IMG/VR virus record: IMGVR_UViG_3300046653_000093
Location: 62,001 to 126,000 of that record
DNA length: 64,000 nt
Reading direction: 5' to 3' (one strand)
A program made the position numbers and the translations under genes. Under the pieces are notes generated by a model. The model did not search any database. It was not told the DNA's origin and saw only the letters and a list, made by a program, of their open reading frames with translations. Of this stretch, positions 3-55,947 are shown one piece after another (position 1 is the stretch's first letter; the number at the start of each line of letters is the position of its first letter).

Positions 3-73
3 GCCCATGTAGTATAATGACATTACATTTCCTTGGTAAGGAAAAAAATCTGGTTTGATTCCAGCCTTGGGCT
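3..73 (+). tRNA. tRNA-Thr(GGT), slightly degenerate
   Basis: Acceptor GCCCATG/CTTGGGC (one mismatch); anticodon arm TTTCC-TTGGTAA-GGAAA; T-arm CTGG-TTTGATT-CCAG (TTT rather than TTC). Confidence 0.75.
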
Positions 74-117
74 CTAATAGTAGTTCGATTCAGAATTCAG
101 CTGATATATGCCAACGC

Positions 118-2838: not shown

Positions 2839-2910
2839 GCGGGCGTAGTTCAGCGGTAGAACGCGATCCTTCCAAGTTCGATGTCAGGAGTTCGATCCTC
2901 CTCGCCCGCT
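2839..2910 (+). tRNA. tRNA-Gly(TCC)
   Basis: GCGGGCG/CGCCCGC acceptor, U73, anticodon loop CTTCCAA, GTTCGATC T-loop. Confidence 0.92.
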
Positions 2911-2934
2911 CTACCAATAATCTGGAGTTCTAAC

Positions 2935-3030
2935 ATGGGTATTAAGAAACATAGAAGTATTAAGACGCATCGTGTTCCTGGTGGTGCTGGTAGTGGATCA
3001 AAAGTGATTCCAATCAAGAGAACTAGTTAA
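2935..3030 (+). CDS. Small basic peptide (31 aa, MGIKKHRSIKTHRVPGGAGSGSKVIPIKRTS)
   Basis: GGAG 7 nt upstream of the ATG; fills the spacer between two tRNAs. Confidence 0.45.
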   Translation: MGIKKHRSIKTHRVPGGAGSGSKVIPIKRTS

Positions 3031-3035
3031 TATTT

Positions 3036-3108
3036 GCGGGCGTAACTCAATTGGCAGAGTACCAGCTTCCCAAGCTGGAGGTTGAGGGTCCGATGCCCTT
3101 CGCCCGCT
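3036..3108 (+). tRNA. tRNA-Gly(CCC)
   Basis: CCAGC-TTCCCAA-GCTGG anticodon arm; atypical T-loop TCCGATG. Confidence 0.88.
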
Positions 3109-3193
3109 CTCCCACCGGCGGTGGGAACAAATGGTTCTTAAGTGAACTGTTTCTGACTGTCACGATGTGAAAGCAGCGATTGATGGTCATTTC

Positions 3194-3274
3194 GCGGGCG
3201 TAGTCTAATGGTATGACAACAGCCTTCCAAGCTGTCTCCGAAAGGAATTGAGAGTTCGAGTCTCTTCGCCCGCT
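3194..3274 (+). tRNA. tRNA-Gly(TCC) with long variable arm
   Basis: ACAGC-CTTCCAA-GCTGT anticodon arm; 14-nt variable region containing TCC-GAAA-GGA. Confidence 0.88.
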
Positions 3275-3284
3275 CTCAACCCAC

Positions 3285-3357
3285 GCGGGTAACTCCTCAA
3301 TGGTGAGGTGCCTCGTTGCCAACGAGGAAGCGGCCAGTTCGATCCTGGTTACCCGCT
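3285..3357 (+). tRNA. tRNA-Gly(GCC)
   Basis: GCGGGTA/TACCCGC acceptor; CCTCG-TTGCCAA-CGAGG anticodon arm; A at position 8. Confidence 0.88.
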
Positions 3358-3390
3358 CAAACAACACAACGCATATCCTGGAATTATACC

Positions 3391-15423: not shown

Positions 15424-15427
15424 TTTG

Positions 15428-15501
15428 TCGGAGTGGTCAGATTTGAACTGACAACCTTTCGGACCCAAACCGAACGCGCTACCAAGTTACGCTACACTCC
15501 G
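15428..15501 (-). tRNA. tRNA-Pro(TGG)
   Basis: CGGAGTG/CACTCCG acceptor, A73, TTCGG-TTTGGGT-CCGAA anticodon arm, GTTCAAATC T-loop. Confidence 0.92.
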
Positions 15502-17562: not shown

Positions 17563-18255
17563 TTAAATATCATCCATATCTGGAGAATCATCTCCAACAA
17601 CAACTTCTTTATGTGGAACTCTTCCTATCAAAGATACATGTTCAGTATGTGAATTAATTAGCCAATTATATAGTTCGACAGTGTTTTGGACATCTACCTC
17701 TGCGCTGTGAGCCCCAAGCTTTGGTACTAACCCAATCCCGAGCATGAAGTTGTTCAGACCGAACTTGGGCTTGAGGGCACCGTACTTGTCCCGCTTGATC
17801 TCGACGCCGGCATCAACTTGAGCCTGGGCAATCTTCTCGCCGTTGCGGTGCTTGGCCACGTGCCTCTTAGCGAAGCTCTGAGTGCAAAGCCAAAGATCGG
17901 CTAGGAACTCCTTGCCAGCCTTATCCCAGGCCCGGTGGATGAATTTTCGGTCAAAGGGAGCGTTATGTGCTATGATGCAGCGGCTAGCTTGGGTTTGGCC
18001 GTCCTCCTTGAGGAACATGTCAATGGACTCAATCGCCTCCTCAATCGGAATCCCTTTCTTCAGGTCATCTGGCGTAATCCCTTGAACTTCAAGGGCTTGC
18101 GCGCTATAAACGTGAGGTCGTTTCACCCTAATTTGAAGACTCAATTGTTCTCTATCGATAACTCTAAGTACTGAGATTTGGTTAATCTCATGCACGTCGC
18201 AACTAAGTCCGCTAGTTTCCGTATCTATGATATAATAATGTATTCCGTTTGACAT
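17563..18255 (-). CDS. DEDDh 3'-5' exonuclease (DnaQ/RNase T-like) 1
   Basis: IDTETSG, AHNAPFD, AHSAEVD. Confidence 0.88.
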   Translation of the reverse strand: MSNGIHYYIIDTETSGLSCDVHEINQISVLRVIDREQLSLQIRVKRPHVYSAQALEVQGITPDDLKKGIPIEEAIESIDMFLKEDGQTQASRCIIAHNAPFDRKFIHRAWDKAGKEFLADLWLCTQSFAKRHVAKHRNGEKIAQAQVDAGVEIKRDKYGALKPKFGLNNFMLGIGLVPKLGAHSAEVDVQNTVELYNWLINSHTEHVSLIGRVPHKEVVVGDDSPDMDDI

Positions 18256-19120: not shown

Positions 19121-19969
19121 CTATGTTTTAGATTGTCTTCCAGGTCTGACACACGTTCCTTTATATGGACGCCAAGTTTTCCAAATCTTGTACAATTCAA
19201 ATTTCCTAGATAATGAGAAGTTTGAATTTTCGTATATATGATTCAAAAAAGATAAAGCGTGTCTTCCAACAAAATACACATCAGTTTTACCAACACAACT
19301 ATTTATATCATACTTATCGCAAAACTTCTCAATATCAAATCTCATAGCATCTGAATATGATGTTATCTTACATCTTGGAGATGTACATCCGAACCAAGGA
19401 TTTGTAATACTACCATCACTATCACTCAGCCCCCTAATAAAGTGCCACATTAATTCATCCGGTAGGTTTGGTAAAGATAATGAGTAGCATTTTTTACCAG
19501 GAACTATCCTAAGATGACCGCAAATATCTTCTACAATTCTTGTTGAGTTTATTTTCACAGATAGGCAGTTTTCATCAGGTACTATATTGAGTGTCGGCGC
19601 AACAAATGATCGTAGTAAATTCAAGCTCTCCACATCGTTTTTGTTGGCGTGAAGAGCAATCCGTTTGTTGTCGATGCTGCCATCACCAGCTATCAAACCT
19701 AATAGGTAAGCCTTGATTTCCGAGTCTATTTCTAAGAAACACGTTTCATTCTTTCGGTGTACAAACGCACCATTTCTTTCCCCAACATTCACCGACTTGT
19801 TATAGCAGTATGTGCAAATATCTTTATCTTGATTTTTTAATCTAGACTTTACAATCCACCTGTATCCCTTTAAATATCGACCCTTACATTTGATAGAAGA
19901 TTTTAAGTCACACTCTATCAGTACCTTAGAATTTGTATTTTTGTAACTAGATAGGTCTACAATAACCAT
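19121..19969 (-). CDS. LAGLIDADG homing endonuclease with N-terminal zinc-binding region
   Basis: AYLLGLIAGDGSI and HFIRGLSDSDGSI. Confidence 0.88.
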   Translation of the reverse strand: MVIVDLSSYKNTNSKVLIECDLKSSIKCKGRYLKGYRWIVKSRLKNQDKDICTYCYNKSVNVGERNGAFVHRKNETCFLEIDSEIKAYLLGLIAGDGSIDNKRIALHANKNDVESLNLLRSFVAPTLNIVPDENCLSVKINSTRIVEDICGHLRIVPGKKCYSLSLPNLPDELMWHFIRGLSDSDGSITNPWFGCTSPRCKITSYSDAMRFDIEKFCDKYDINSCVGKTDVYFVGRHALSFLNHIYENSNFSLSRKFELYKIWKTWRPYKGTCVRPGRQSKT

Positions 19970-21560
19970 GACATCCCTCACATTTTCCACAAAAGAAACG
20001 AAAATATTCAATTTATTGCTATCCGTAGTTACTACTAAAACACCAAGTACCATTCTACGAGTAGCTGGGGGTTATATTAGGGATAAGTTATTATGCCTAG
20101 ATTCCAATGACATAGATATTACCGTTGATAATATGACTGGCGAAGCTTTTGCCAATTTAGTCAGCAACTACATGACTGAACATGGACTCAAAAAGCAGAA
20201 CGTTACTGTTGTAGGGGCAAACCCAGATCAATCGAAACATCTAGCTACTGCTATGATCAAACTGTTCGGGCTGCCGATCGACTTCGTGAATCTGCGTACA
20301 GAGACATACGCAACAAGCCGAATCCCAACCATGAAAATGGGCACCCCCGAAGAGGATGCTCAACGTAGAGATCTTACCATCAACTCGCTGTTCTACAATA
20401 TTAATAATGGCGAAATTGAGGATTATGTAGGCGGAATCAAAGACCTTCGTGCAGGCATTGCGCGCACCCCTCTCGATCCGATGCAAACATTTCTTGACGA
20501 TCCTTTGCGCATTCTTCGAACGGTTAGGTTTGCGGCTAAGTACGGACTGGAACTTGATCCGGCTATCATTACAGCTGCTCACAAACCAGAAGTCAAAAAA
20601 TCATTCAAGAACAAGATTTCAAATGATCGCATCTGGGCTGAGCTTGCCGGCAAGAAAGAAGGCGACAAGTACAAGGCCGGTGCTCTGATTGGCCAAAACC
20701 CAACACGCGCCATCGAGCTGCTAAAAGAGCTTGGCTTGATGGAGGCGATATTTGACCCCACACCAGAAGAGGTCAAGAACCTGGCTCCGCCCCCAAAGCC
20801 GCCAGAAGACCCAAACGTCCCTGTTGAACCACCGCGCGAAGAACGAATGGTTCCATGGGAAACTCCACAGAACAACCCTCATCATCAGTTCGATATTTGG
20901 AATCATACTCTGCAAGTGGTGAAGAATCTAATTGATCAAACACCACAACCAATTCGTGAAGACCAAGAGACGTACCTTGTGCGTAACCTAGCAGCATTGC
21001 TGCATGACATAGGAAAACGATACACTGGAATTCAACGCACTTCGGAGAACGGCGGTCATACCTCATATCATGGACATGAGGAAACCTCTGCTAGATTGGC
21101 TAATGCCGTACTAAACAGATTGCGAGTTCCACAGAATATTATCAAAAGAGTTATGGATTTGATTTCTGTGCACTTGCGCCCTCATACCCTATTGGATCAG
21201 GGAAGTTCCAGGAACTATCGAAGATTCGTTCGTGATTATCCTGATTGGGAGCATAGTGTCGATCTTGCTATTGCTGACAATCTTGGGAAGCAAAACTTCA
21301 CTCAGGAACAAGTAGAAACTGAGAAACAAAAGTACGAAGACTTGCGTGGAAAAATCCAAGAATCCATGCAGTGGTCAAACCATAACCCACGACACAACCG
21401 GACTATTCCTCGTCCAATTACTGGCAATGACCTCATTGCCATTGGTATAAAGCCAGGCCAAATCATGGGTCAGATTATGGCGGCTCTCGACGAAGCCCTG
21501 CTGGACAATCCAGGTATGAGCAAAGAAGAAGCTCTTGATTTAGCAAGAACCTTTATTTGA
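19968..21560 (+). CDS. cca: Class II CCA-adding tRNA nucleotidyltransferase with C-terminal HD domain
   Basis: AGGYIRD..DIDI, DFVNLRTE, EDAQRRDLTINSL, DDPLRILR..RFA; HD motif LLHDIGK. Confidence 0.92.
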   Translation: MTSLTFSTKETKIFNLLLSVVTTKTPSTILRVAGGYIRDKLLCLDSNDIDITVDNMTGEAFANLVSNYMTEHGLKKQNVTVVGANPDQSKHLATAMIKLFGLPIDFVNLRTETYATSRIPTMKMGTPEEDAQRRDLTINSLFYNINNGEIEDYVGGIKDLRAGIARTPLDPMQTFLDDPLRILRTVRFAAKYGLELDPAIITAAHKPEVKKSFKNKISNDRIWAELAGKKEGDKYKAGALIGQNPTRAIELLKELGLMEAIFDPTPEEVKNLAPPPKPPEDPNVPVEPPREERMVPWETPQNNPHHQFDIWNHTLQVVKNLIDQTPQPIREDQETYLVRNLAALLHDIGKRYTGIQRTSENGGHTSYHGHEETSARLANAVLNRLRVPQNIIKRVMDLISVHLRPHTLLDQGSSRNYRRFVRDYPDWEHSVDLAIADNLGKQNFTQEQVETEKQKYEDLRGKIQESMQWSNHNPRHNRTIPRPITGNDLIAIGIKPGQIMGQIMAALDEALLDNPGMSKEEALDLARTFI

Positions 21561-22236: not shown

Positions 22237-23271
22237 TCATAGTATGATGCTATGTGGATGTGATTCTTTCAAGCCAGCATTGGATATTACTACAAACTCA
22301 GGATCTAATTTCAGTTCTTTAAGATTGCGCGCACCTTGATATGAGCACCCACTTCTTATACCCTCAGTAAGTTTAATAACAACGTCAGCAACTTTTCCCT
22401 TATAGGGGACAAGGGCAACAACACCCTCTATATGATTTTGTTTATGGGTAGAGCTACCCTCATACTTCTTGAATTTTGAACCTCCATCTAAGATGCCTGT
22501 GGGCCTATAACGATCATCAATAACCGAACCTGGCGCTTCATCAGTTCCAGCAAATAGATTGCCAATCATTACCAGATCTGCAAAGGCCAAAGCCTTCACA
22601 CAATCACCTGCGCTCTTGATTCCGCCATCGGCTATAAATATTGGCCATTCGCCATCGTGCTCACCATAGCAACCATTGCATACGTTGTCTAAAGCGCTGA
22701 GTTGTGGATATCCATTGCCAGTCTCAATTCTTGTTGTGCAAAGAGATCCTGGCCCAACACCAATCTTGATAATATCAGCTCCAGCACTCCACAGATGATT
22801 GGCCCCGGTCTCAGTAACCACATTACCAGCTATAATAAGAATGCTTGGATATTTGGCGCGAATATCTGCAACAAAATCATATACTTTATCATGATCTCCA
22901 TGGGCAACATCTACGCAAATTACATTGCACCCAATGTTATAGAAATCACTTACTAATACTTTATCCTCATCCTTTATACCAACTGAAACCCCAATCAACC
23001 CATCAGATACCGAGTTCCTAGCTGTATCGAAGTTCTTTAGAAGAGTTATATGGTCATCAAACCGATGAAGGATAGGGAGCCCGCCAAGATTGGCTATGGC
23101 AATTGTCATCTTAATTTCGGTAACAGTCTTCATATTTGCCGAAAGAATAGGCAACTTCAAACTATTACCTTTTGGTAACCTAACTGATAAATCTACATCA
23201 TCGCGAGATTTGAGAGAGCTGCGTTTGGGGATTAGAAGCACATCGTCAAAAGTATATCCTTGAGTGAACAT
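22237..23271 (-). CDS. IMP dehydrogenase/GMP reductase family protein (no CBS domains)
   Basis: TFDDVLLIP, DVAHG, GVGPGSLCTTR, IADGGI. Confidence 0.9.
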   Translation of the reverse strand: MFTQGYTFDDVLLIPKRSSLKSRDDVDLSVRLPKGNSLKLPILSANMKTVTEIKMTIAIANLGGLPILHRFDDHITLLKNFDTARNSVSDGLIGVSVGIKDEDKVLVSDFYNIGCNVICVDVAHGDHDKVYDFVADIRAKYPSILIIAGNVVTETGANHLWSAGADIIKIGVGPGSLCTTRIETGNGYPQLSALDNVCNGCYGEHDGEWPIFIADGGIKSAGDCVKALAFADLVMIGNLFAGTDEAPGSVIDDRYRPTGILDGGSKFKKYEGSSTHKQNHIEGVVALVPYKGKVADVVIKLTEGIRSGCSYQGARNLKELKLDPEFVVISNAGLKESHPHSIIL

Positions 23272-34034: not shown

Positions 34035-34380
34035 TCCATGTATTTACGACCATCTCATAATAAAGCTTCTTGGCTAATGTTCTCGCCTTAATATCTTTTC
34101 GCATGATAAATTTAGGCTTGAACCATTGAGCTAGTTTAGTATCCTGACAATAGATTTCATATCCTCTATCACCATCTTCTATAATCTCTACTTCTAGTTC
34201 ACCAAGCAAACCACGTAGTTTTATCTTTTCTTCTACAGTTAGTAATATATCAGGCCAAATATCTTCTAGAGGAACACCTATCTGTTCTAGTATGCTTTTA
34301 ATAAAAAGGTTTCTCTCCTCTTCCTCTACAACCTTTTCGTCTCCTCTATCTAGATAAACCGACCGATTCATTACCCACAT
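34000..34380 (-). CDS. Hypothetical protein
   Basis: Coupled to the RNR stop. Confidence 0.5.
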   Translation of the reverse strand: MWVMNRSVYLDRGDEKVVEEEERNLFIKSILEQIGVPLEDIWPDILLTVEEKIKLRGLLGELEVEIIEDGDRGYEIYCQDTKLAQWFKPKFIMRKDIKARTLAKKLYYEMVVNTWSVFDQEENEND

Positions 34381-37300
34381 CCACTATATGTACACTCCTC
34401 GTTGGTACAATTACCACAGGCAGCTCCAGTCTTTCGATATGTTCGCTTGCCACAAGATGGGCACTTTTCCATAGGGACTGCGTTTTTCCTATCAAAATCT
34501 TCAATAGTAGATGTCTTAGACTCTTCCTCTTGCTGCTCTTCTGCATAAGTTCGCAAGACACGAGCAATATTAGTTGGCAAAGAGAATATATACTGTCCGC
34601 CAATCTTATCCAACTGCTCACAGATGAACATGATAGGAACACCATGCCTCAAGTTCATGCTGGTTGTTCTTGCTGTCAGCTCTAGGATTTGAAGATCTTT
34701 TTCGCTCAATCCAAAATACGGGGCAATCACCAAGACCTCATACGGCTTCTTGGTACCAGGGAAGAAGCTCACTGTAACATAAGCATTTCTCGGTTCACCA
34801 TTACCAAAATCAATTCGAATCTTGTGCGTCTCTGAATCCAGAATCTTGTCACGCTTTGGAGCAAATGCCTGACCGGGCGCATCAAAGATTGGTGTAAACC
34901 AACTAAGTACATCTTGCTTCGTATACTTGGGCAATGATATACCATCTGCCGTTTCCCAATCAAAATTGCCCTGAGCTAAACTCTTAGCCTTGGCAATCTC
35001 CTTCAATTCCTTGCTGACATCTTCCAGCTTAGAGGCGATGGCATCCCACAGATCAAATCCTTCCTTATCAAAGACTTGACTATAATGTCCGATAAGATAG
35101 TTTTCGCACTTCAGCGCCTGCTTATCGCCTGTTACCAAAACTCCATCGCGAGATCCGTCAACATAAACGGTGACTCCTTTGAGGCCATATTTCCAAGCCT
35201 CCATATAGATCTTAGAAACAACACTATTGGGAGTTCCTGCAGGTAAATTGATAGTACTACTAATCGAATGATCGATATGCTTCTGCTCAGCAGCCTGGAT
35301 CATGATTCGCTTTGTCCAGTCTACCTCATCCGAGTTAACAAAGAATTCAGGAAGTGGTGCGCTCTCATCTAGGCCGAACTTCTCTAGATATGCTCTAGCA
35401 TTGTGTGAGAACTGCTTGTACTCTTGCCATGAATCACCATTGACGTCTGTGAAGTCAACACGTACACCAACATCATTTGGATTCACCTTCTTGCGGCGAA
35501 TGAAGTAGATACGGAAGACTGGTTCAACACCCGAAGAAACATTGAAGTAAGAAAAATTGCCTAGTTTGGAAATGATAGCCACCGAACCAGTTGGGGCTTG
35601 CGTCAACATAGAAATGTTGCGCCTTCCATATATAGCCATATCAGCTAGGATGTCTGCTGGTAGGTCTTTGATGAAAGGATTGTCCTTTTCCAATTCCCAA
35701 TTGAACTCTGGGAAGGGCCCACGAATTTTTGCCAACTCTACAGATGTTCTATAGGCCGTTTCTTTGAATGTTCGGTAGATTTTATCTACCATTTCAATAG
35801 CAGCATCAGAATCATACCTAATACGAAGCTGTGCTAAAGCATCGGCTAGCCCATGAGTTCCTAAGCCAGTTCTACGACCATCACGCCCGGCATCATGAAG
35901 CTTCTGCCAGATAACAATCTCCTGATCGACATCCTCTTGGGTAGTGCCAGTGTCTTTGATAACCGTTATGATCTTCTCAATCAATTCCAATTCAAGATCA
36001 ACAAGGTTATCACCCATCCTTGCTTGAATAGCAACATCGGCAATGAAGCGATCGAAATCGAACTGGGCTGTTCCCTCAAATGGGTTGTTGACGTAATTCG
36101 TTAGATTCAAAGATATCAAACGGCAACTATCGCTTGCTGAAAGAATAATCTCTGAACATGGGTTAGTTGAAACTGACTTGAATCTTGGATAGCAATGTGC
36201 TGGTAATGTTCGTACGGCGTTATTCCAGAGAACCAAACCAGGCTCTGCTGACTTGGTTGCAGAATCAACAATAGCATCCCAAACACGGCGCGCAGAAACC
36301 TTTCGGCTGATCTTCGGCGTCTTACTTTCACAAGGCCAACGAACTTCATAATCAGTTCCATCTTCAACAGCCTTGAGGAACTCATCACTCAAGCGCAAGG
36401 AGATGTTAGCTCCTGTAACTTGAGTTAGGTCATGCTTCATGTTCGTAAACTTGAGCACATCTGGATGATGGACATCCAAAGTTATCATCAAAGCGCCACG
36501 CCTCCCGCTGTTATGAACATAAAATCCTTCGCACCAAAATAGATGTTCTTCAGGAAGCTCTAAATCGAATGTCTCTTCAACTCCGTCCTCTGTAATTGAT
36601 GATACGGTCGCCTTTATAAGCAGACCGCTCTGAGCCAGCTTTTCGCCAGCAGACTTGATCTTCAAATACGCAGTGGCCGATACAAAATGTGAGTTATCAG
36701 GTATAAAATCATATTGATTATGAGTTACGCCAAGTGACTTTGCTTTGTATGGTGTTGTATAATTGTCTCGCTTAGAAATGAAGCGTTCATATATCTTTTC
36801 TGCAGGAAAAGTACCACCATCAATACAGGCAACCAATGCCTCTTGTGCATGTGTTCCTGTAATCGCTACAGAGTATAAATCTCTCCACTCTTTTGATGTA
36901 CGATCTTCTGTGTGAATTTTACTAATAATTCCATTTGCCATCAACATTATCTGAATATCCTTGGCAAAAGAAAATGAAGTTGTTGAAAAAGAATATCCTT
37001 TTTTGGATTTACCGTTAGTTCCATCGGCGTCAAAGAAACCTGCCAAGAATGACATTTGAATCTCTGATGAGGCTTTTAATATACTAGATGGTACCCTAAT
37101 TTTGGTTGATTTTTCCTTGAGTAGTGAATTAGCCTTCAACCAATGACAAACCAACTTACTGTTAATTGTGACCTTATTAACGGCACCATCACCGGGCCTA
37201 ATTGATGCATCAATACCAAATACTCTTTTAATTATCTTACAAGCTTGTGCCTGAACCGCCGGATGTTCATGAGCACATGCTATTGAAATCAATAATGGTT

Positions 37301-38297
37301 CGTTGAATTTATCATACTCAACGCCCCCATCACCATACATTAACCCAAGGATATATGCTAAATCAGTATTTATATTACGCGGTAAATTTACATCTTCATT
37401 TAATCTATTTGAATTATTGTATTGCTTCTTTACGTATTCTGGACAAACCAGATCATCAGTTCCAACGCCAACCCTCCAAGCTCCAGGTATTAATACTACA
37501 GAGTCACCCTCTTCAAAATCACCTAGGCGCTTTTCTATCAGGACACCATCCTCTTCTGTTAAGAATAGATGATCTTCCGACGCCCGAACAGAGAAACCAT
37601 ACGATGTTTGTAGTTTGTAAATCTTCTTTGAACCATTAATGAATAAATTAGAAACCCCAATAAATCCATTCTTGGTCCATACAGAATCAATACTAGGCCT
37701 TACTTCCTCAATTGGAATTAGCCCATTTCTAGTAAGAACCCTCTCGCCTTTAGCAATACACTGTCCTATCTTTCTGGTAACTTCAGAGAAGAAATCTGCA
37801 AAGCTCCATGCTCCAGTTGTTGTGCGTGCGGCATTGTTCACCGTCATCCCATCTGGGCGCAGGGATGATAAATCAAACCCAACTCCACAGCGTCTTTTAT
37901 AGAGTTGGGCAAGATTGTGAGCGGTCCTAAAAATACCAGAAATTGAATCTTCTGGAGATGCTTCAACGACGCAGTTGGAAGCACTCATTGTTTGGTAGGG
38001 ATTTCCTACCGCCGCCATAACTGAACCTTGTGGTACAATGCGTCCAAATTGAGACATGGCATTGTAATATATAGCTGTTTGATTTGTGTTATCAATAGAA
38101 TCATCGTATCTAGTATCAATACGAGCAAACTCTGTAGCCAGCCTATTGTGCATACTCTCTGGAGTTGGTTCTACAATATCACCATCAGAATCACGCATTG
38201 CGTATTTGTTCAGGTATACGCTGGCTGATATCTCCTCTCCGTTGAAGTAAGCAAGTGCTAGTTTATGGGCATCTTCGTATGAATACTTTTCCGACAT
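34371..38297 (-). CDS. nrdJ: Class II (B12-dependent) ribonucleotide reductase, intein-containing
   Basis: SNC, GRRGALM, TNPCSE, APTGS, SSGVEP, SSTIN, KG.T.Y.DGSR; C-terminal zinc ribbon. Confidence 0.93.
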   Translation of the reverse strand: MSEKYSYEDAHKLALAYFNGEEISASVYLNKYAMRDSDGDIVEPTPESMHNRLATEFARIDTRYDDSIDNTNQTAIYYNAMSQFGRIVPQGSVMAAVGNPYQTMSASNCVVEASPEDSISGIFRTAHNLAQLYKRRCGVGFDLSSLRPDGMTVNNAARTTTGAWSFADFFSEVTRKIGQCIAKGERVLTRNGLIPIEEVRPSIDSVWTKNGFIGVSNLFINGSKKIYKLQTSYGFSVRASEDHLFLTEEDGVLIEKRLGDFEEGDSVVLIPGAWRVGVGTDDLVCPEYVKKQYNNSNRLNEDVNLPRNINTDLAYILGLMYGDGGVEYDKFNEPLLISIACAHEHPAVQAQACKIIKRVFGIDASIRPGDGAVNKVTINSKLVCHWLKANSLLKEKSTKIRVPSSILKASSEIQMSFLAGFFDADGTNGKSKKGYSFSTTSFSFAKDIQIMLMANGIISKIHTEDRTSKEWRDLYSVAITGTHAQEALVACIDGGTFPAEKIYERFISKRDNYTTPYKAKSLGVTHNQYDFIPDNSHFVSATAYLKIKSAGEKLAQSGLLIKATVSSITEDGVEETFDLELPEEHLFWCEGFYVHNSGRRGALMITLDVHHPDVLKFTNMKHDLTQVTGANISLRLSDEFLKAVEDGTDYEVRWPCESKTPKISRKVSARRVWDAIVDSATKSAEPGLVLWNNAVRTLPAHCYPRFKSVSTNPCSEIILSASDSCRLISLNLTNYVNNPFEGTAQFDFDRFIADVAIQARMGDNLVDLELELIEKIITVIKDTGTTQEDVDQEIVIWQKLHDAGRDGRRTGLGTHGLADALAQLRIRYDSDAAIEMVDKIYRTFKETAYRTSVELAKIRGPFPEFNWELEKDNPFIKDLPADILADMAIYGRRNISMLTQAPTGSVAIISKLGNFSYFNVSSGVEPVFRIYFIRRKKVNPNDVGVRVDFTDVNGDSWQEYKQFSHNARAYLEKFGLDESAPLPEFFVNSDEVDWTKRIMIQAAEQKHIDHSISSTINLPAGTPNSVVSKIYMEAWKYGLKGVTVYVDGSRDGVLVTGDKQALKCENYLIGHYSQVFDKEGFDLWDAIASKLEDVSKELKEIAKAKSLAQGNFDWETADGISLPKYTKQDVLSWFTPIFDAPGQAFAPKRDKILDSETHKIRIDFGNGEPRNAYVTVSFFPGTKKPYEVLVIAPYFGLSEKDLQILELTARTTSMNLRHGVPIMFICEQLDKIGGQYIFSLPTNIARVLRTYAEEQQEEESKTSTIEDFDRKNAVPMEKCPSCGKRTYRKTGAACGNCTNEECTYSGCG
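36510..37760 (-). mobile_element. Intein (417 aa) with LAGLIDADG endonuclease in NrdJ
   Basis: GQ|CIAKGERV...SEDHLF...LGLMYGDG...FLAGFFDADG...YVHN|SGRRG. Confidence 0.92.
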
Positions 38298-49736: not shown

Positions 49737-50729
49737 TCATTTTGAGCGTTCGATATGAGCTAATCTGGCCCCATAGAATCTGGCGGCCCTCTGTGACACC
49801 TTATACCAATTGATGGTTTCTATCAGCCCATCAATTAATGACGTCCTGGCTTCAAATCCTAAAATCTCTTTAGCCCTAGACACATCAAGGCATCTACGAG
49901 GTTGCCCATCTGGATTTTCATAGTCGTAAATAATAGTTCCTTTATATCCAACAATATCACAAACAGCAGTTACGACCTCATGAATGCTGGTCTCCACCCC
50001 AGTGCCAAGATTGATTATTAGATTAGTATTTAGCTCTCGTTGAATTGCAAGCAACAAATAATGACTAACATCCTTTGCAAAAATAAAGTCTCTAGTAGCC
50101 TTTCCGGTTCCCCAGATATTAACACTATCTTGATTGAGATAATGGGCATCGCATACTTTTTTAACTATAGCCGGTATTACATGAGAGTTCTCTAGATCAA
50201 AATGATCTTTTGGCCCAAATATATTTGATGGAAGAAAGAACACAGAGTTTAATCCATATTGATCCCTATATTTCTCTCCAAGAACAAGTAATGCCTTTTT
50301 GGCAAAAGAATATCCACTATTAGAGCGGTCCTCTCTCCCATTCCAAAAATCATCTTCTTTAAATGGAGTTGCGCAATTTAATGGATAACCACAAGCAGAT
50401 CCGCAATTGTATACATTCTTAATTCTATCCAAATTAGCTTCAATTCCAGAATATAAATTTATACCCATCAACAAGTTTGTATGAGTTAAATTTGCTGGTC
50501 TGCGTTTATTCAATCCAATCCCACCAACAAAGGCAGCTAAATGTAAGATAGTATCGAAATCATTGCTCTTGAAATAGTCAAGAACGCCACCAACATTTGT
50601 AAGGTCCAATTCCTTTGATGATGGTGTTAAAATATCCAAACCATTATTAACAGCTTCTTCAACGACATGCTGCCCAAGAAAGCCAGAGGCTCCAGTAATT
50701 AATATTTTCACATCACCTCCATATTCCAT
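49737..50729 (-). CDS. fcl: GDP-L-fucose synthase
   Basis: GASGFLG, LAAFVGGIG.N, YSFAK, FDLENSHVIPA, WGTG.ATRDF, PDGQPRRCLD. Confidence 0.9.
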   Translation of the reverse strand: MEYGGDVKILITGASGFLGQHVVEEAVNNGLDILTPSSKELDLTNVGGVLDYFKSNDFDTILHLAAFVGGIGLNKRRPANLTHTNLLMGINLYSGIEANLDRIKNVYNCGSACGYPLNCATPFKEDDFWNGREDRSNSGYSFAKKALLVLGEKYRDQYGLNSVFFLPSNIFGPKDHFDLENSHVIPAIVKKVCDAHYLNQDSVNIWGTGKATRDFIFAKDVSHYLLLAIQRELNTNLIINLGTGVETSIHEVVTAVCDIVGYKGTIIYDYENPDGQPRRCLDVSRAKEILGFEARTSLIDGLIETINWYKVSQRAARFYGARLAHIERSK

Positions 50730-51661
50730 GCATCTAATATTTCCAACTCTCTTTCACTTACAATTCCATTATTTACCAAAGATATATATATATGATTCAT
50801 GTTTTGAACCTTATTTTCTCCCAAATGGCACCTGTCCAATATCTCTACTGTTCTTTCCACATCGGAATACATCTGGATTTCATCCACAAAATCCTTCATA
50901 TAATCTTGCCTAAATCTATTTTGATAGACTATAGATTTAGAAAATCCCAAATACAAATTGTCCTGTCTTAGTAATCTTTGTGCGATGTAAGATCTGAGTA
51001 TATCAGCGAATCTCCAAGATACAGTTGACGGGAAATACATATATTGGAAACATTCTTTATTCCAGAATGTACTTTGAGAATTGAATGGGGCATAAGAATT
51101 ACTATCCAATACAAATGGATATTTTACATCAAAATTCAATTGATGATTGAAAACCAATCGGTAGATAGCATCGACATCAGGGTCCTGGTCTATTAGTGTT
51201 TGCCATATACCAACCTTTTTACTATCTCTATTCGACATAGTGTATGTAATGTTTTTATTGATATAACTTAATGGAAATCCCCTATTCCAAATTTTCTCAT
51301 TTGAAAGATATCCATATATATTGGCAAATTTCTCAGAGCTTGATAATACATTATCGCACACAAATCCAGTATCAAAATTCCATGAGTCGTATGGAATGTT
51401 ATCATCATCTGTTTCGTAAATTATGTCGCTACCACAGCGCATAGCCATTAGATATCCTAAGTTCTTTCGACTATAGCGATTTGGCCCAATCATATTTGAT
51501 AGTTTTGAATTTTCTTCATAACGCAAAAATTCAATTTGTGCATCATTATATTCTGGAGTTTTCTTATCACCAACAAGAATAAGCTTCCAATTAGGGATAT
51601 TCTTGAACTTATAAATTGATTCTGTTTCAGAGTTTATTGTGGTTATGATTGTGCTATTCAT
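50708..51661 (-). CDS. STELLO/DUF288-family glycosyltransferase-like protein
   Basis: VGDKKTP, YSRKNLGYL.A, ETDDDN, RGFP, DPDVDAIYRL, PFNSQ.T.W, DILRSY.AQR. Confidence 0.85.
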   Translation of the reverse strand: MNSTIITTINSETESIYKFKNIPNWKLILVGDKKTPEYNDAQIEFLRYEENSKLSNMIGPNRYSRKNLGYLMAMRCGSDIIYETDDDNIPYDSWNFDTGFVCDNVLSSSEKFANIYGYLSNEKIWNRGFPLSYINKNITYTMSNRDSKKVGIWQTLIDQDPDVDAIYRLVFNHQLNFDVKYPFVLDSNSYAPFNSQSTFWNKECFQYMYFPSTVSWRFADILRSYIAQRLLRQDNLYLGFSKSIVYQNRFRQDYMKDFVDEIQMYSDVERTVEILDRCHLGENKVQNMNHIYISLVNNGIVSERELEILDAWNMEVM

Positions 51662-51989
51662 TGTATATTTTTACGCTATCCTCAAATAGCGATTTACCTT
51701 CTATGATAGATTTTTCAATCAATTTATTAATGGCCTCTACTAACCTTGGTCGCTTTTGTTTGAAACAGATATCTATTTTTCTTTTCAATGCCCCTAATTC
51801 CTGATCTGATATGTCTTTATGAATCAAATCTTCAAGCATCCAGGTTCGAATGTGAACTATAATTAGCTTGTCAAGAACTTCCCCTAAACTATCAGTCTCA
51901 ATATATTCTTTAGCTTCAGGAATCTCTTTCTTACCACAGATTTCTGCAACATACTCTTTTATCCGCAAATCTATAATGTCCTTTGGCAT
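51654..51989 (-). CDS. DUF4254-like protein
   Basis: SLGEVLDKL.I.HIR.W.LED. Confidence 0.5.
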   Translation of the reverse strand: MPKDIIDLRIKEYVAEICGKKEIPEAKEYIETDSLGEVLDKLIIVHIRTWMLEDLIHKDISDQELGALKRKIDICFKQKRPRLVEAINKLIEKSIIEGKSLFEDSVKIYNE

Positions 51990-51994
51990 ATAAA

Positions 51995-52804
51995 TTACAA
52001 TCCTTTTATTTCTTGTTTGATCATTTCAGGAGATACGAGTTTTATTTTTAGATTACTAAATGTAACACTTGATGAAAAAAACAGAGGATGCCGTTCACAA
52101 AGACATGCACAGTTTTTTATGAGCAATAGCTTTGAATCACAACAAATCTGGCAAACTGCACCACCTCCACTTGCTGGTGAAATAATTACATTGCATAAAG
52201 GATGATGCATAACAGATGCCCAATCTTGCAAGTTATCAAGATATGTTACGCCTTTGTCTTTCCAAACCCTTTCAGATCCAATTCCAAAAACAAATACCTG
52301 GCTATATTTTGATTTAAGCATATCTATAACTGATCGATAATAATAATCATTTAGATTTCTATCAGAACACCAATTTCTAATTCTAATCAAAACTCCTGCA
52401 AATTTTTTGGAAATATGATATTTTTCTTCAACATTTGAATAGTCAACTTTCAAAATATCATCTTTACATTCTGGATATTTGTAATGATCAATTTTACCGC
52501 AACTATATTCGTCATGTAATTCCCCAAGATCTTCAAATTTACAAACACGATCTTCTGTATATTTAAAGACATCTTCTGTATCCGGTAGGTCTTCAATCCC
52601 AATAACATTCTTGGCTATTTTTGTATATAGGAATTTTCTATCGGCTATGGTAACGACAACATCATCTGGAGTCCATATCCCTTTATGCAAATCTCTAATA
52701 TACGCCAATCTAGAGACCATAAGTTCCCAGCCGAGTTCAGTATAGTTTTCTGTTGTTCCAATATCAGATTTTTGGCCAGTACCAGTTATTATATATGTCA
52801 TCAA
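51995..52804 (-). CDS. Putative glycosyltransferase
   Basis: Cluster context; weak GT-B-like C-terminus. Confidence 0.4.
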   Translation of the reverse strand: MMTYIITGTGQKSDIGTTENYTELGWELMVSRLAYIRDLHKGIWTPDDVVVTIADRKFLYTKIAKNVIGIEDLPDTEDVFKYTEDRVCKFEDLGELHDEYSCGKIDHYKYPECKDDILKVDYSNVEEKYHISKKFAGVLIRIRNWCSDRNLNDYYYRSVIDMLKSKYSQVFVFGIGSERVWKDKGVTYLDNLQDWASVMHHPLCNVIISPASGGGAVCQICCDSKLLLIKNCACLCERHPLFFSSSVTFSNLKIKLVSPEMIKQEIKGL

Positions 52805-53884
52805 TTACCTCGAATCTGCTAAGCTCTCAACCATAGTTACTAATTTATCAGTCAGGAAATTCCAATCATTATCCTTGCGATCAAGATGAGTTTGAATTAG
52901 TTCTTGTCTTATTTTGTAATACTCATCTTTGAAATCATTACTCAAAAGTCTCTTTAGATTGGCTAGATTTTGATCTTGGCGCGCAGGGTCATATGTCCAC
53001 TTCAGGATATCGTGACCATATGGATCCCACCACTCTTCGTGGCCAAATAGCGGAAGTCCTTGGCAAAGGAACTCATTAGCAAAGTATGGAAACCCTTCTG
53101 AATATGAGGTGTGTGCCAAATATGCAAAATCGGATAATATCTCTCTAACCGCTCTGTCTGTTTTGTAAATGTGACTTATCACATTATACGATGAACTGTC
53201 AAAGTTGTTTGACTTTAGCATATCTATGAGCTGTTCTGCATTTTTGCCACCAGCATCTTTCCCACCTCTATTATAGATTAGCATTTTCAATTTAGATAAT
53301 CTAATATTTCTATTATAGAATGTAGAGAAATAGGCTTTGTCTATTGGGTGCGGAACTAGCTCTATATTTTGTATGCTTGATACTAGTAATTGTTTCGTTT
53401 CAAGCACATCAATATTATCTGAATTCCATTTGCGTATTGCTACATCATTAGTTTTGAAGATTGCGCCATAAAGCCCTTCAAGTAAAGATGGGTGAGTGGG
53501 ATATGTATTAGATCCTATTCCATACTTATTGAATTTACCATACTTCCACTTATCAACTTCAAAATTATCGTTGTCAATAATAATTGAGCGCTCAGGAAAC
53601 TTTTTCAATTGGTAAGAGGGGCGTGCAGAAATGAATACATCTTTATTTGTCATTTGTATTTCATTTTTAGGTAATACAAACTCTTCAGTTGGCCCATTTT
53701 TCCAATTGGTATATATTGTATTCTTTGGAAATTTTGCTAATATAGAATTGTATACAAAATATGTTATCTGATCCCATGAACATCTTCTGCCATGCAAATA
53801 ACCATTTGGATTTTCTGGAGGTAATGATATGTAGATATTCATAACCTTATCCACTCTGGAGGTGCTAGGTCTGTTGTTGACCAT
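52805..53884 (-). CDS. Putative GT-B glycosyltransferase
   Basis: SYSEGFPYFANEFLCQGLP (EX7E motif). Confidence 0.55.
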   Translation of the reverse strand: MVNNRPSTSRVDKVMNIYISLPPENPNGYLHGRRCSWDQITYFVYNSILAKFPKNTIYTNWKNGPTEEFVLPKNEIQMTNKDVFISARPSYQLKKFPERSIIIDNDNFEVDKWKYGKFNKYGIGSNTYPTHPSLLEGLYGAIFKTNDVAIRKWNSDNIDVLETKQLLVSSIQNIELVPHPIDKAYFSTFYNRNIRLSKLKMLIYNRGGKDAGGKNAEQLIDMLKSNNFDSSSYNVISHIYKTDRAVREILSDFAYLAHTSYSEGFPYFANEFLCQGLPLFGHEEWWDPYGHDILKWTYDPARQDQNLANLKRLLSNDFKDEYYKIRQELIQTHLDRKDNDWNFLTDKLVTMVESLADSR

Positions 53885-54564
53885 GCGCTATAAGCGGGAC
53901 CAAACCAATTGCTAGGCGCAACAACTACCTTATCTTCTGCCTTACTTAACCACGCCGCCCACCAAGAAAAAGAACTATTTGCTATAATGAAATCGGAACA
54001 ACTAACCATTTTACTGAAATCAGAAATTGTAGAAGATGTCTCGTTTATAGTAAACTCATTGCCCTTGAAGTTTTGTTTGCACCATTCAGTATCATCAGAA
54101 AATACCATGAATTTCTTCGTTGGAATCTTTTCTGCTGCACTCATATAATATTGCATCGTTTGAGTTGGATGATGCTTTGGATAGTTTAAATAATCTCCAC
54201 GGCGAACATGAATACAACAATAATCCTTCATGTCTTCAACTGGAATTGGCGATAATATTTCTTTGATGTAATCCTTGCAATTATCAAAGTATCTCCAGCT
54301 TTGAAAATAACCAGATAATGAACAGTTATTCTGAAATGGTATCTCTACATAATGATACCCAGATTCTTTGTATTGTGTAGATATCTTAATAGAAGACTTA
54401 TCAATAAAATACTCGTCTGGTATGTTTGTCCAACTTTGAAATTCCCATTTTGGAAAGCAAAACTGAACATTGTATCTCTTCGCATATCCAATAGTTGCAG
54501 CTATCTGAAATAAGGAATTACCAAATCGACCATGATGCCCAAGTTCAATAAATGTAGCTGTCAT
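53839..54564 (-). CDS. GT11 alpha-1,2-fucosyltransferase
   Basis: GRFGNSLFQ, GYFQS, HVRRGDY, FSDD, IANSSFSWW.AWL. Confidence 0.92.
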   Translation of the reverse strand: MTATFIELGHHGRFGNSLFQIAATIGYAKRYNVQFCFPKWEFQSWTNIPDEYFIDKSSIKISTQYKESGYHYVEIPFQNNCSLSGYFQSWRYFDNCKDYIKEILSPIPVEDMKDYCCIHVRRGDYLNYPKHHPTQTMQYYMSAAEKIPTKKFMVFSDDTEWCKQNFKGNEFTINETSSTISDFSKMVSCSDFIIANSSFSWWAAWLSKAEDKVVVAPSNWFGPAYSAWSTTDLAPPEWIRL

Positions 54565-54565
54565 A

Positions 54566-55913: not shown

Positions 55914-55947
55914 ATAAACCCATATATAACACGATATATTTGCAATT

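What the first reader, a model, noticed from the sequence alone, without database searches (positions are those of the whole stretch)
19968..21560. Phage CCA-adding enzyme with a fungal/plant-type head fused to a bacterial-type HD domain
Seen: NPDQSKHLATA, IDFVNLRTETY..SRIP...GTPEEDAQRRD and RTPL.P.QTFLDDPLR closely follow my recollection of yeast/plant Cca1 (NPEKSKHLETA, DFVNLRSE.Y...SRIP...GTPEEDALRRD). Those eukaryotic enzymes lack an HD domain, whereas this protein has one, after a Pro-rich linker (APPPKPPEDPNVPVEPP). The EDxxRRD template motif and an RxE flexible loop are intact, which suggests full CCA activity. This bears on the origin of the ancestral eukaryotic CCA clade or on cross-domain transfer.
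Basis: partly seen in the sequence, partly recalled or inferred. Interest (0 to 1): 0.68.

Follow-up and report, generated by a model that had tools for sequence, protein, structure and literature searches.

The report
Jumbo-phage CCA enzyme of eukaryotic type
A 392-kb peat phage encodes a tRNA CCA-adding enzyme whose closest known relatives outside phage-like metagenomic contigs are the enzymes of plants, fungi and protists, yet it still has the active-looking HD phosphohydrolase that eukaryotes lost, so it bears on where the eukaryotic enzyme came from.

Summary
ORF 19968-21560 (+, 530 aa) is an intact class II tRNA nucleotidyltransferase, and every quoted motif is present. Outside its own phage family, the nearest relatives of its head/neck (residues 1-268) are eukaryotic 'eCCA' enzymes. 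They show 45-49% identity (236-251 bits) and the Arabidopsis structure scores E 2e-63. The best bacteria found (Bacteroidota) reach 35% and 111 bits.

The 'eukaryotic head fused to a bacterial HD domain' reading is not supported as a fusion:
- The whole protein is colinear with Arabidopsis CCA (441 residues superposed at 2.8 Å).
- Its extreme C-terminal tail is also eCCA-like (hhalign E 7e-12).
- Head and HD-tail trees give the same phage sub-clades.
- The nearest bacterial relatives sampled also carry HD.

So HD is most likely ancestral. It was kept in several phage-like lineages and degenerated in eukaryotes, and independently in some phage variants.

The likely function is maturation and repair of tRNA 3' ends. 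The phage carries 51 tRNA genes, and at least 42 lack an encoded CCA.

Branching order between the phage lineages and eukaryotes is unresolved (AU p about 0.11 either way). Heimdallarchaeial sequences could not be included. Enzyme activity is inferred, not tested.

The parts
19968..21560 (+). Complete gene for a 530-aa class II tRNA nucleotidyltransferase (CCA-adding/repair enzyme), P0001
   Evidence: ORF and translation. Pfam, NCBIfam and PHROG hits. More than 120 full-length metagenomic homologues at 44-88% identity. AlphaFold model with pLDDT 88.7.
19968..20771 (+). Head plus neck (residues 1-268) with motifs A-E and the flexible-loop region; carries the eCCA-type signature NPxQSKHL(A/E)TA, DFVNLR, SRIP, FYNIN
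   Evidence: Motif alignment. PDB phmmer best hit 9kma at 2.3e-63. Big search: the top 150 cluster representatives all score at least 222 bits, and every one that carries an organism or eukaryote-database label is eukaryotic.
20772..20852 (+). Variable linker that includes the Pro-rich insertion (residues 273-289)
   Evidence: The long Pro-rich form is present only in P0001 and its closest relatives in alignment A1. pLDDT drops to 66-68 here.
20853..21287 (+). HD phosphohydrolase body domain (residues 296-440); H306, H346-D347, H370, H402 and D437 are invariant in the family
   Evidence: Invariant columns in 20 aligned family members. Pfam HD and NCBIfam HDIG hits. Structural match to stand-alone HD enzymes, PhnZ Z 10.4. 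Colinear with the Aquifex CC-adding enzyme 3wfo.
21288..21557 (+). C-terminal tail (residues 441-530) with the motif G.DL..LG.KPG..(M/V)G....L.E..L.NP..(S/T)KEEA; shared with eukaryotic eCCA tails and with tRNA_NucTran2_2
   Evidence: hhalign of family tail against eukaryote tail: probability 97.5%, E 6.8e-12; global alignment 98.4%. Weak Pfam tRNA_NucTran2_2 hit at 484-522.
17563..18255 (-). DEDDh 3'-5' exonuclease (RNase_T/DnaQ family); a conserved divergent neighbour of the CCA gene and a possible tRNA 3'-trimming partner (inference)
   Evidence: Pfam RNase_T. Same neighbourhood in relatives L009 and L016. NCBIfam cannot separate RNase T from DnaQ.
2839..3358 (+). Cluster of four tRNA-Gly genes. 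Further tRNA genes lie at 3-74 (+) and 15427-15501 (-). All belong to the phage's set of 51 tRNAs and are the likely substrates.
   Evidence: ARAGORN on the window and on the whole genome.

Best explanation
The gene encodes a functional phage tRNA CCA-adding/repair enzyme of the class II family. Its architecture is head-neck-HD body-tail, as in many bacterial enzymes (Bacteroidota, Actinomycetota, Clostridia, the Aquifex CC-adding enzyme, E. coli Cca). Its sequence belongs to the clade otherwise known only from eukaryotes ('ancestral eukaryotic' eCCA: plants, fungi, amoebae, algae, stramenopiles, euglenozoans). It is not a recent chimera. It represents the HD-retaining state of the eCCA lineage. 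That state survives in several lineages found only on phage-like metagenomic contigs: the window's family on contigs up to 463 kb, the P0171/P0153 group, and a CCA-HD-2H 'Swiss-army-knife' group. Eukaryotes, and independently some phage variants, let the HD body degenerate while keeping the head and the tail end. Inferred mechanism: the head adds C74-C75-A76 without a template (motifs A-E and the flexible loop are intact) to the phage's own tRNAs, and it rebuilds damaged 3' ends. The HD domain removes 2',3'-cyclic or 3'-phosphate groups from cleaved ends, as shown for E. coli Cca, so that nuclease-damaged tRNAs become primers again. The conserved DEDDh exonuclease next door may trim 3' trailers. 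Shown here: sequence, fold, motif conservation, phylogenetic placement and tRNA content. Inferred: all enzymatic activities and the direction of evolution.
For: Identity: Pfam, NCBIfam and PHROG tRNA nucleotidyltransferase hits. All motifs A-E are intact. The model has pLDDT 88.7. The best structural match is Arabidopsis CCA 9kma, Z 27.7, 441 residues at 2.8 Å across model residues 1-530. eCCA affinity of the head: PDB E 2e-63 to the plant enzyme against about 1e-20 to bacterial ones. In a search of 1.84 billion cluster representatives, the top 150 all score at least 222 bits. Those with a full HD tail (or a remnant of one) are unnamed metagenomic proteins; four groups were checked and lie on phage-like contigs. 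Every hit that carries an organism or eukaryote-database label is eukaryotic; most hits carry no label. Family head-HMM scores: family 350-478, eukaryote-like hits 284-335, Bacteroidota, Lak and LR756501 about 126-132, other bacteria 55-104. Head identity: eukaryote to eukaryote across supergroups has median 56%, eukaryote to this family 49%, eukaryote to the SAK phage group 55.5%, and any of these to outgroups about 30%. The eCCA-like clade has 100/100 support, and the window family 100/99. Against fusion: tail-end homology with eukaryotes. In the HD-tail tree the eCCA-headed phage groups form one moderately supported clade (89/75), with the same sub-clades as in the head tree, apart from bacterial tails. 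The Bacteroidota relatives are annotated as HD proteins and match the tail HMM across its length. HD-less variants are nested inside the family. HD active-site residues are invariant. Need for the enzyme: 51 tRNA genes plus a tmRNA, and none is followed by CCA. At most 9 could end in an encoded CCA, depending on where ARAGORN sets the 3' end. Phage context and synteny.
Against: No biochemical data exist. S. pombe shows that eCCA-type enzymes can be CC-only or A-only after subtle changes, and both S. pombe enzymes hit strongly. The genome also holds a second minimal nucleotidyltransferase, so a split activity is not excluded. The stem leading to the eCCA-like heads is long (1.6 changes per site), while the corresponding tail branches are short. 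That unevenness could hide an old domain replacement. The HD core itself aligns to eukaryotic bodies only with low confidence. Most metagenomic relatives are unlabelled, and their phage origin rests on gene context for four groups. Structural hallmark genes of the phage are very divergent: only a weak tail-sheath hit, and no Pfam capsid or terminase hit.
Confidence: 0.72

Rival explanations
1. A phage captured the head/neck of a eukaryotic eCCA gene and recombined it with the HD-tail half of a bacterial CCA enzyme.
For: The head is 45-49% identical to eukaryotes but only 29-36% to bacteria. The HD-tail is 24-32% identical to bacterial tails and almost unalignable by BLAST to eukaryotes. A variable low-complexity Pro-rich linker sits exactly between the two halves. 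The head stem is much longer than the tail stem.
Against: The tail end after the HD core is eCCA-like. The whole chain superposes on Arabidopsis CCA. Head and tail trees share the same sub-clades, and the phage tails form their own (moderately supported) clade rather than nesting in a bacterial one. The Pro-rich insert is confined to the closest relatives, but the HD is family-wide. The closest bacterial heads sampled (Bacteroidota) already have HD. Loss of HD is seen happening inside the family.
Confidence: 0.1
2. Cross-domain capture. The phage lineages obtained the whole gene from an early or unsampled eukaryote (or its Asgard-like ancestor) that still had an HD body. On this reading the phages are recipients, not a source or sister group.
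For: In unconstrained trees three eukaryotic sequences (an oomycete, Diplonema and a chytrid) fall outside the main eukaryote clade, among phage groups. Identity between phages and eukaryotes is nearly as high as between eukaryotic supergroups. A 2026 preprint places eCCA with Heimdallarchaeaceae and Bacteroidota-type enzymes.
Against: No labelled eukaryote in the samples has an HD hit. Eukaryote monophyly is not rejected (AU p 0.107 and 0.114). Huge phages (Lak-A1, LR756501) branch between Bacteroidota and the eCCA-like clade (98/91), which fits a prokaryote/phage-side origin.
Confidence: 0.13
3. The enzyme does not add the full CCA. It may have a partial activity (CC-adding or A-adding, working with the second 247-aa nucleotidyltransferase of the genome) or act as a poly(A) polymerase.
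For: A second head-only class II nucleotidyltransferase exists in the genome. S. pombe cca1 and cca2, of the same eCCA type, have split activities, and both match strongly. The NCBIfam PcnB models also hit, though far below cut-off.
Against: The flexible-loop region, which bacterial CC-adding enzymes lack, is present and eCCA-like. Motifs B, C, D and E are canonical. All PcnB scores are far below cut-off and weaker than the CCA models. Most relatives were seen on contigs with no sign of a partner, though this was not surveyed systematically.
Confidence: 0.12

Closest known systems
Eukaryotic 'ancestral-type' CCA-adding enzymes (eCCA): Arabidopsis thaliana CCA (PDB 9kma), S. pombe cca1/cca2 (9ns2, 9ns4), yeast Cca1 type
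   Same: Head/neck at 45-49% identity with the same signature strings. The fold is colinear over 441 residues at 2.8 Å. The C-terminal tail motif is homologous. Motifs A-E are the same.
   Different: The phage protein keeps the H..HD..H..H..D residues in the body domain, and labelled eukaryotic proteins have no HD hit. It has no organellar targeting extension. It is encoded by a phage.
Bacteroidota CCA enzymes annotated 'HD domain-containing protein' (e.g. Parabacteroides distasonis WP_320643352.1; Prevotella; Phocaeicola)
   Same: Same head-neck-HD-tail layout. They are the closest bacterial heads among the bacterial sequences found in the plasmid collection (33.6-35.3% identity, 105-111 bits) and branch as the nearest bacterial group in the head tree.
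   Different: They lack the eCCA signature strand. The head-HMM score is about 130, against 350-478 in the family and 284-335 in the eukaryote-like hits. A long stem separates them.
E. coli multifunctional CCA addition/repair protein (Cca) with an HD phosphohydrolase
   Same: A nucleotidyltransferase head followed by an HD domain. It is the functional model for 3'-end healing plus CCA addition (annotation; activities from established literature, Yakunin et al. 2004, cited from my own knowledge).
   Different: Only remote similarity: head 61 bits, tail 31 bits, and NF008137 scores 85.7 against a cut-off of 451. It belongs to a different subfamily.
Aquifex aeolicus CC-adding enzyme (PDB 3wfo-3wfs)
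   Same: The only solved structure whose C-terminal half matches the HD-tail by sequence (E 1e-10, colinear from the HD motif to the C-terminus). Z is about 25-26.
   Different: About 22% identity. By the literature it is a CC-only enzyme that lacks the flexible loop. Its head is not of the eCCA type.
Known phage tRNA nucleotidyltransferases (phrog_2244; Vequintavirinae, Erwinia, Vibrio and Aeromonas phages, Lak phages, huge phage LR756501)
   Same: A phage-borne CCA enzyme that accompanies large tRNA sets. LR756501 also has head plus HD.
   Different: The best match in 50,697 phage records is only 32.5% identical. Those enzymes group with bacterial types, not with eCCA.

Membership tests
Class II tRNA nucleotidyltransferases (CCA-adding enzymes) | Pol-beta head with motif A (GGxxRD...DxD) and motifs B (RRD), C, D ((E/D)DxxRxLRxxRF) and E (RxxxE) | tested here: met
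   All motifs are present in P0001 and aligned with eukaryotic, bacterial and phage enzymes. Pfam PolyA_pol E 3e-26.
Class II tRNA nucleotidyltransferases (CCA-adding enzymes) | Sea-horse fold: head, neck, and helical body and tail | tested here: met
   The model (pLDDT 88.7) matches 27 PDB entries of class II CCA-adding, CC-adding, A-adding and poly(A) polymerase enzymes at Z 20-28 over residues 1-530.
Class II tRNA nucleotidyltransferases (CCA-adding enzymes) | Template-independent addition of exactly C-C-A to tRNA | not testable with these tools
   Needs an enzyme assay. The flexible-loop region that CC-adding enzymes lack is present.
Eukaryotic ancestral-type eCCA clade (Betat et al. 2015, PMC4538823) | Head groups phylogenetically with plant, fungal, amoebozoan and other non-holozoan enzymes, apart from bacterial types | tested here: met
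   The clade of eukaryotes plus these phage lineages has 100/100 and 100/99 support against 7-15 bacterial and phage outgroups. Similarity ranking agrees.
Eukaryotic ancestral-type eCCA clade (Betat et al. 2015, PMC4538823) | eCCA-specific sequence composition between motifs A and B (NPxxSKHLETA strand, DFVNLR, SRIP loop) | tested here: met
   Present in P0001 and in all phage eCCA-like groups. Absent from Lak, LR756501, and the Verrucomicrobia, E. coli and Mycobacterium-phage enzymes.
Eukaryotic ancestral-type eCCA clade (Betat et al. 2015, PMC4538823) | Encoded by a eukaryotic nuclear genome; the body domain has no HD catalytic residues | tested here: not met
   The gene is encoded on a 392-kb virus record with a tmRNA and bacterial-type genes. 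The HD residues are invariant in the family.
Bacterial multifunctional CCA addition/repair protein, E. coli type (NCBIfam NF008137) | Score above the curated equivalog cut-off | tested here: not met
   85.7 bits against a cut-off of 451.
Actinobacterial CCA tRNA nucleotidyltransferase (TIGR02692) | Score above the curated equivalog cut-off | tested here: not met
   It is the best NCBIfam hit, but at 171.1 bits against a cut-off of 438.8.
HD-domain metal-dependent phosphohydrolases (PF01966) | Conserved H...HD...D metal ligands in an all-helical domain | tested here: met
   Pfam HD scores 28.8 bits, above the cut-off of 22. H306, H346-D347, H370, H402 and D437 are invariant in 20 aligned members. 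Structural matches to the HD enzymes PhnZ and TmpB at Z 9-10.
HD-domain metal-dependent phosphohydrolases (PF01966) | Phosphatase or 2',3'-cyclic phosphodiesterase activity | not testable with these tools
   Inferred only from residue conservation and the E. coli Cca precedent.

The most novel reading that the evidence does not exclude
[quoted passage not shown] They would mark the route by which a Bacteroidota-type enzyme reached the eukaryotic stem: bacterial HD-CCA, then huge-phage lineages, then proto-eukaryote, with later decay of the HD site. In that case an essential eukaryotic translation enzyme would have a viral intermediate. This would give concrete support to the 'viral highway' that a 2026 preprint only speculates about.
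Probability: 0.22. Interest if true: 0.85.

Novelty: new variant of a known kind. Interest (0 to 1): 0.64.

Why it matters
[quoted passage not shown] A 2026 preprint links it to Heimdallarchaeaceae and Bacteroidota-type enzymes on an 'eroded' signal and considers no viruses. In this analysis, several lineages found on phage-like metagenomic contigs have heads 45-60% identical to eukaryotic enzymes. That is as close as eukaryotic supergroups are to each other. They also keep the HD domain that links them to bacterial enzymes. These sequences could break the long stem leading to eukaryotes in future trees. They show that the eukaryotic body domain is most likely a decayed HD domain. They make the direction of transfer testable. 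For phage biology, the finding adds a tRNA 3'-end maturation/repair module (CCA enzyme, HD, and a neighbouring DEDDh exonuclease). In relatives the enzyme is fused to 2H phosphoesterase or to cell-wall hydrolase domains. All of this sits in phages that carry near-complete tRNA sets.

Tried and rejected
- **Megablast of the gene against 50,697 phage records:** no match.
- **Motif-based scan of 185,579 species genomes:** only two hits, both on short (2.0 and 4.9 kb) MAG contigs whose genomes hold a separate, much more distant CCA homologue (head-HMM about 90 bits). One is identical to a metagenomic family member, so they are probably phage contamination. The patterns were strict, so the near-absence in cells is suggestive, not proof.
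- **ESM Atlas feature search on head and tail:** returned only generic bacterial CCA/HD clusters and did not discriminate.
- **Pfam Phage_capsid, Terminase_6C and NCLDV capsid in the genome:** nothing found. Tail sheath was only weak (22 and 36 bits). PHROGs were blank for most large ORFs at 300-340 kb. The phage assignment therefore rests on the IMG/VR record, the tmRNA, the tRNAs, DnaB, gene density and the weak sheath hit.
- **NCBIfam on the neighbouring exonuclease:** it cannot be told apart as RNase T or DnaQ.
- **AU tests:** neither eukaryote monophyly (p 0.107, 0.114) nor phage-lineage monophyly (p 0.111) is rejected, so the branching order stays open.
- **Local profile alignment:** it did not extend across the HD core. 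Only the global alignment did, at low confidence.
- **Sequences I could not obtain:** Heimdallarchaeial, Chlorobiota and Rhodothermota CCA2 sequences. Bacteroidota sequences came only from chromosome pieces filed as plasmids.
- **Sequencing runs:** the run search shows only that the gene recurs in peat and permafrost metagenomes from several studies.
Full report
**What is there.** Window 19968-21560 (+) is one open frame of 530 codons. Pfam finds a PolyA_pol head (30-164, E 3e-26), an HD domain (341-407, above the gathering score) and a weak tRNA_NucTran2_2 tail (484-522). NCBIfam's best model is the actinobacterial CCA enzyme, but far below its cut-off (171 against 439 bits). The E. coli-type and PcnB models score lower still. 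PHROGs calls it a tRNA nucleotidyltransferase.

**Genomic setting.** The window is part of a 391,957-bp IMG/VR virus record estimated 91% complete.
- The genome has 51 tRNA genes and a tmRNA. None of the tRNA genes is followed by CCA, and at most nine could end in an encoded CCA, depending on where ARAGORN sets the 3' end.
- It has DnaB, an intein-bearing ribonucleotide reductase and a GMP reductase/IMPDH-family gene.
- It has a weak tail-sheath homologue and no NCLDV capsid.
- The gene recurs in peat and permafrost metagenomes from several studies.

I treat it as a jumbo phage of a bacterial host. Its structural genes are very divergent.

**The family.** The word-index protein search found more than 120 full-length relatives at 44-88% identity. 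Nearly all have head plus HD, on contigs up to 463 kb.
- A relative on a 131-kb contig keeps the local gene order: DEDDh exonuclease, CCA gene on the opposite strand, two small genes, IMPDH-family gene.
- In an alignment of 20 members the catalytic head residues are invariant. So are H306, H346-D347, H370, H402 and D437 of the HD domain.
- The Pro-rich stretch is a lineage-specific insertion in a variable linker of low model confidence.
- The best match among 50,697 deposited phage genomes is only 32.5% identical, and there is no nucleotide match.

**Is the head really of the eukaryotic type? Yes.**
- Against PDB sequences the head/neck hits Arabidopsis CCA (9kma) at 2.3e-63, S. pombe cca2 at 2.5e-54 and cca1 at 4.6e-47. 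E. coli poly(A) polymerase, Thermotoga, Aquifex, human and Bacillus enzymes lie between 1e-20 and 1e-7.
- An exhaustive HMMER search with residues 1-268 against 1.84 billion cluster representatives gave 1,286 hits below 1e-30. The best 150 all score at least 222 bits at 45-73% identity.
- Among those, the ones with a full HD tail, or a remnant of one, are unnamed metagenomic proteins.
- Every hit that carries an organism or eukaryote-database label is eukaryotic: Heterostelium, Soliformovum, Chattonella, Diplonema, Nothophytophthora and a chytrid, and, from the reciprocal search, Dictyostelium, Acanthamoeba, Balamuthia, Physarum, many plants, green algae and a red alga. Most hits carry no label.
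- A head HMM built from the family scores 350-478 on family members and 284-335 on the eukaryote-like hits. It scores about 126-132 on Bacteroidota and on the huge phages Lak-A1 and LR756501, and 55-104 on other bacterial and phage enzymes.
- Median head identity is 56% between eukaryotic supergroups, 49% between eukaryotes and this family, 55.5% between eukaryotes and a second phage group, and about 30% to outgroups.
- In the reciprocal search, with the Heterostelium head as query, three phage-context proteins score as high as plant enzymes do (314-317 bits).
- The strand NPxQSKHL(A/E)TA and the DFVNLR...SRIP segment occur only in eukaryotes and these phage groups.
In careful trees the eukaryote-plus-phage clade has 100/100 and 100/99 support.

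**Is it a fusion with a bacterial HD domain? The evidence says no.**
1. *Fold.* The AlphaFold model (pLDDT 88.7) superposes on the Arabidopsis enzyme over 441 residues at 2.8 Å, spanning model residues 1-530 (Z 27.7). The HD body therefore occupies the place of the eukaryotic body domain. The same region also matches free-standing HD enzymes (Z about 10).
2. *Tail.* A profile of the family's C-terminal halves aligns with a profile of eukaryotic C-terminal halves at 97.5% probability (E 6.8e-12) over the last ~110 residues, including the G.DL...KPG...NP..(S/T)KEE motif. A global alignment is colinear throughout (98.4%). In it the HD dipeptide and the AIAD aspartate face non-ligand residues in eukaryotes, though confidence in that stretch is low.
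3. *Congruent trees.* The HD-tail matches bacterial CCA tails along its whole length (Nonomuraea 109 bits, a Clostridium plasmid 91, Bacteroidota 69-84, LR756501 129; Aquifex CC-adding enzyme E 1e-10). In a tail tree, however, the eCCA-headed phage groups form their own moderately supported clade (89/75). Its sub-clades are the same as in the head tree, and it does not nest in any bacterial group.
4. *Nearest bacteria.* The nearest bacterial heads sampled, from Bacteroidota, belong to proteins with the same head-HD-tail layout. In the head tree Bacteroidota join the branch leading to Lak-A1 plus LR756501 and then the eCCA-like clade (91/76 and 98/91). This agrees with a 2026 preprint that groups eCCA with Heimdallarchaeaceae and Bacteroidota/Chlorobiota/Rhodothermota.
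5. *Loss in progress.* HD loss is seen inside the window's own family. Variants of 430-460 aa keep the head (54% identity) and the last 50 residues, but their body has decayed. That is the same end state as in eukaryotes.

The simplest reading is that HD is ancestral to the eCCA lineage and was retained in phages.

**Other phage-like lineages with eCCA-type heads and HD.**
- P0171 lies on a 152-kb contig with SbcCD-like genes, DnaJ, an L7/L12 homologue and an RNA ligase.
- The P0153 group carries 200-250-residue N-terminal extensions.
- A 'Swiss-army-knife' group adds a 2H phosphoesterase after the tail. It sits beside an RNA ligase and a PTH2 peptidyl-tRNA hydrolase.
- Members of the window's family are fused to VanY/M15, M23 or CHAP cell-wall hydrolase domains.

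**What remains open.** Within the eCCA-like clade the order of branching is not resolved.
- Unconstrained trees leave three long-branch eukaryotes outside the main eukaryote clade.
- Eukaryote monophyly is not rejected (AU p 0.107 and 0.114), and neither is monophyly of the phage lineages (p 0.111).
- The stem to the eCCA-like heads is long, so long-branch effects are possible.
- Heimdallarchaeial sequences could not be fetched with the tools at hand.
- Whether phages are sister to, source of, or recipients from the eukaryotic lineage is therefore undecided.

**Function.** Motifs A-E and the flexible-loop region are intact and eCCA-like. The phage carries 51 tRNA genes, and at least 42 lack an encoded CCA. 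The most likely role is 3'-end completion of phage tRNAs and repair of tRNA ends. The HD site would remove cyclic or 3'-phosphates, as in E. coli Cca (established literature, cited from my own knowledge). The conserved DEDDh exonuclease neighbour could trim trailers, but it cannot be distinguished from a DnaQ-type proofreader. Jumbo-phage CCA enzymes have been discussed as RNA-repair components (PMC7824862) and listed in huge-phage translation repertoires (PMC7162821). I found no report of a eukaryotic-type phage enzyme in the papers searched.

**Verdict.**
- It is a new variant of a known kind of enzyme.
- Its main value is evolutionary. These are the closest non-eukaryotic relatives of eCCA found in this analysis, and they still carry the bacterial HD hallmark.

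Noticed in passing
window 19121-20053 (-): A LAGLIDADG-type homing endonuclease ORF (310 aa) is inserted between the exonuclease module and the CCA gene. As the longest ORF it overlaps the first 86 nt of the CCA gene. It is absent at this place in the syntenic relatives L009 and L016.
   Followed up: partly
window 17563-18255 (-); also L009:4952-5668 and L016:3018-3632: A DEDDh (RNase_T/DnaQ family) exonuclease is a conserved, divergently oriented neighbour of the CCA gene in three related contigs. It may be a tRNA 3'-trimming partner, but family models cannot tell RNase T from DnaQ.
   Followed up: partly
window 22237-23271 (-) and 34371-38297 (-); L009:8147-10306: The GMP reductase/IMPDH-family gene is intein-free here, but its counterpart in a relative carries an intein (719 aa). 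The ribonucleotide reductase large subunit in the window carries an intein with a LAGLIDADG endonuclease.
   Followed up: no
G000:C1:372503-373246 (-) = L002:1210-1953 (outside the window): A second, minimal class II nucleotidyltransferase (247 aa, head and neck only, very divergent) lies in the same phage genome. Its role is unknown. It could be a partner with partial activity or an unrelated RNA-tailing enzyme.
   Followed up: partly
G000:C1:117243-234945 (tRNA region; window 3-74, 2839-3358, 15427-15501): The phage carries 51 tRNA genes and a tmRNA (tag ANDNAYAAAA). One predicted tRNA has a CTA anticodon (amber suppressor; ARAGORN labels it 'Pyl') at G000:210332-210422.
   Followed up: no
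relatives P0086, P0059, P0077, P0093, P0095, P0101-P0119: Many family members are fused at the N-terminus to cell-wall hydrolase domains (VanY/M15, M23, CHAP). This is an odd pairing and might mean the enzyme travels with the virion. P0254 is a 1,697-aa frame that combines topoisomerase IB, CCA-HD and a LigD-type primase-polymerase.
   Followed up: no
L017:4226-8923 (contig of P0352): A separate phage-like lineage encodes CCA-HD-tail-2H phosphoesterase in one protein, next to an RNA ligase and a PTH2-type peptidyl-tRNA hydrolase. This looks like a compact tRNA repair cassette.
   Followed up: partly
L003 and L004 (short contigs of a Polyangia MAG and a Verrucomicrobia MAG): The only 'bacterial genome' hits for the eCCA-type motifs lie on 4.9-kb and 2.0-kb contigs of MAGs. 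Each MAG also holds a separate, much more distant CCA homologue elsewhere. L003 encodes a protein identical to metagenomic family member P0100. These contigs are likely phage sequence binned into MAGs.
   Followed up: partly
window 50001-58000: G+C drops to 33-35% (against about 40% elsewhere) across a block that, with its flanks, holds nucleotide-sugar epimerase and glycosyltransferase genes.
   Followed up: no
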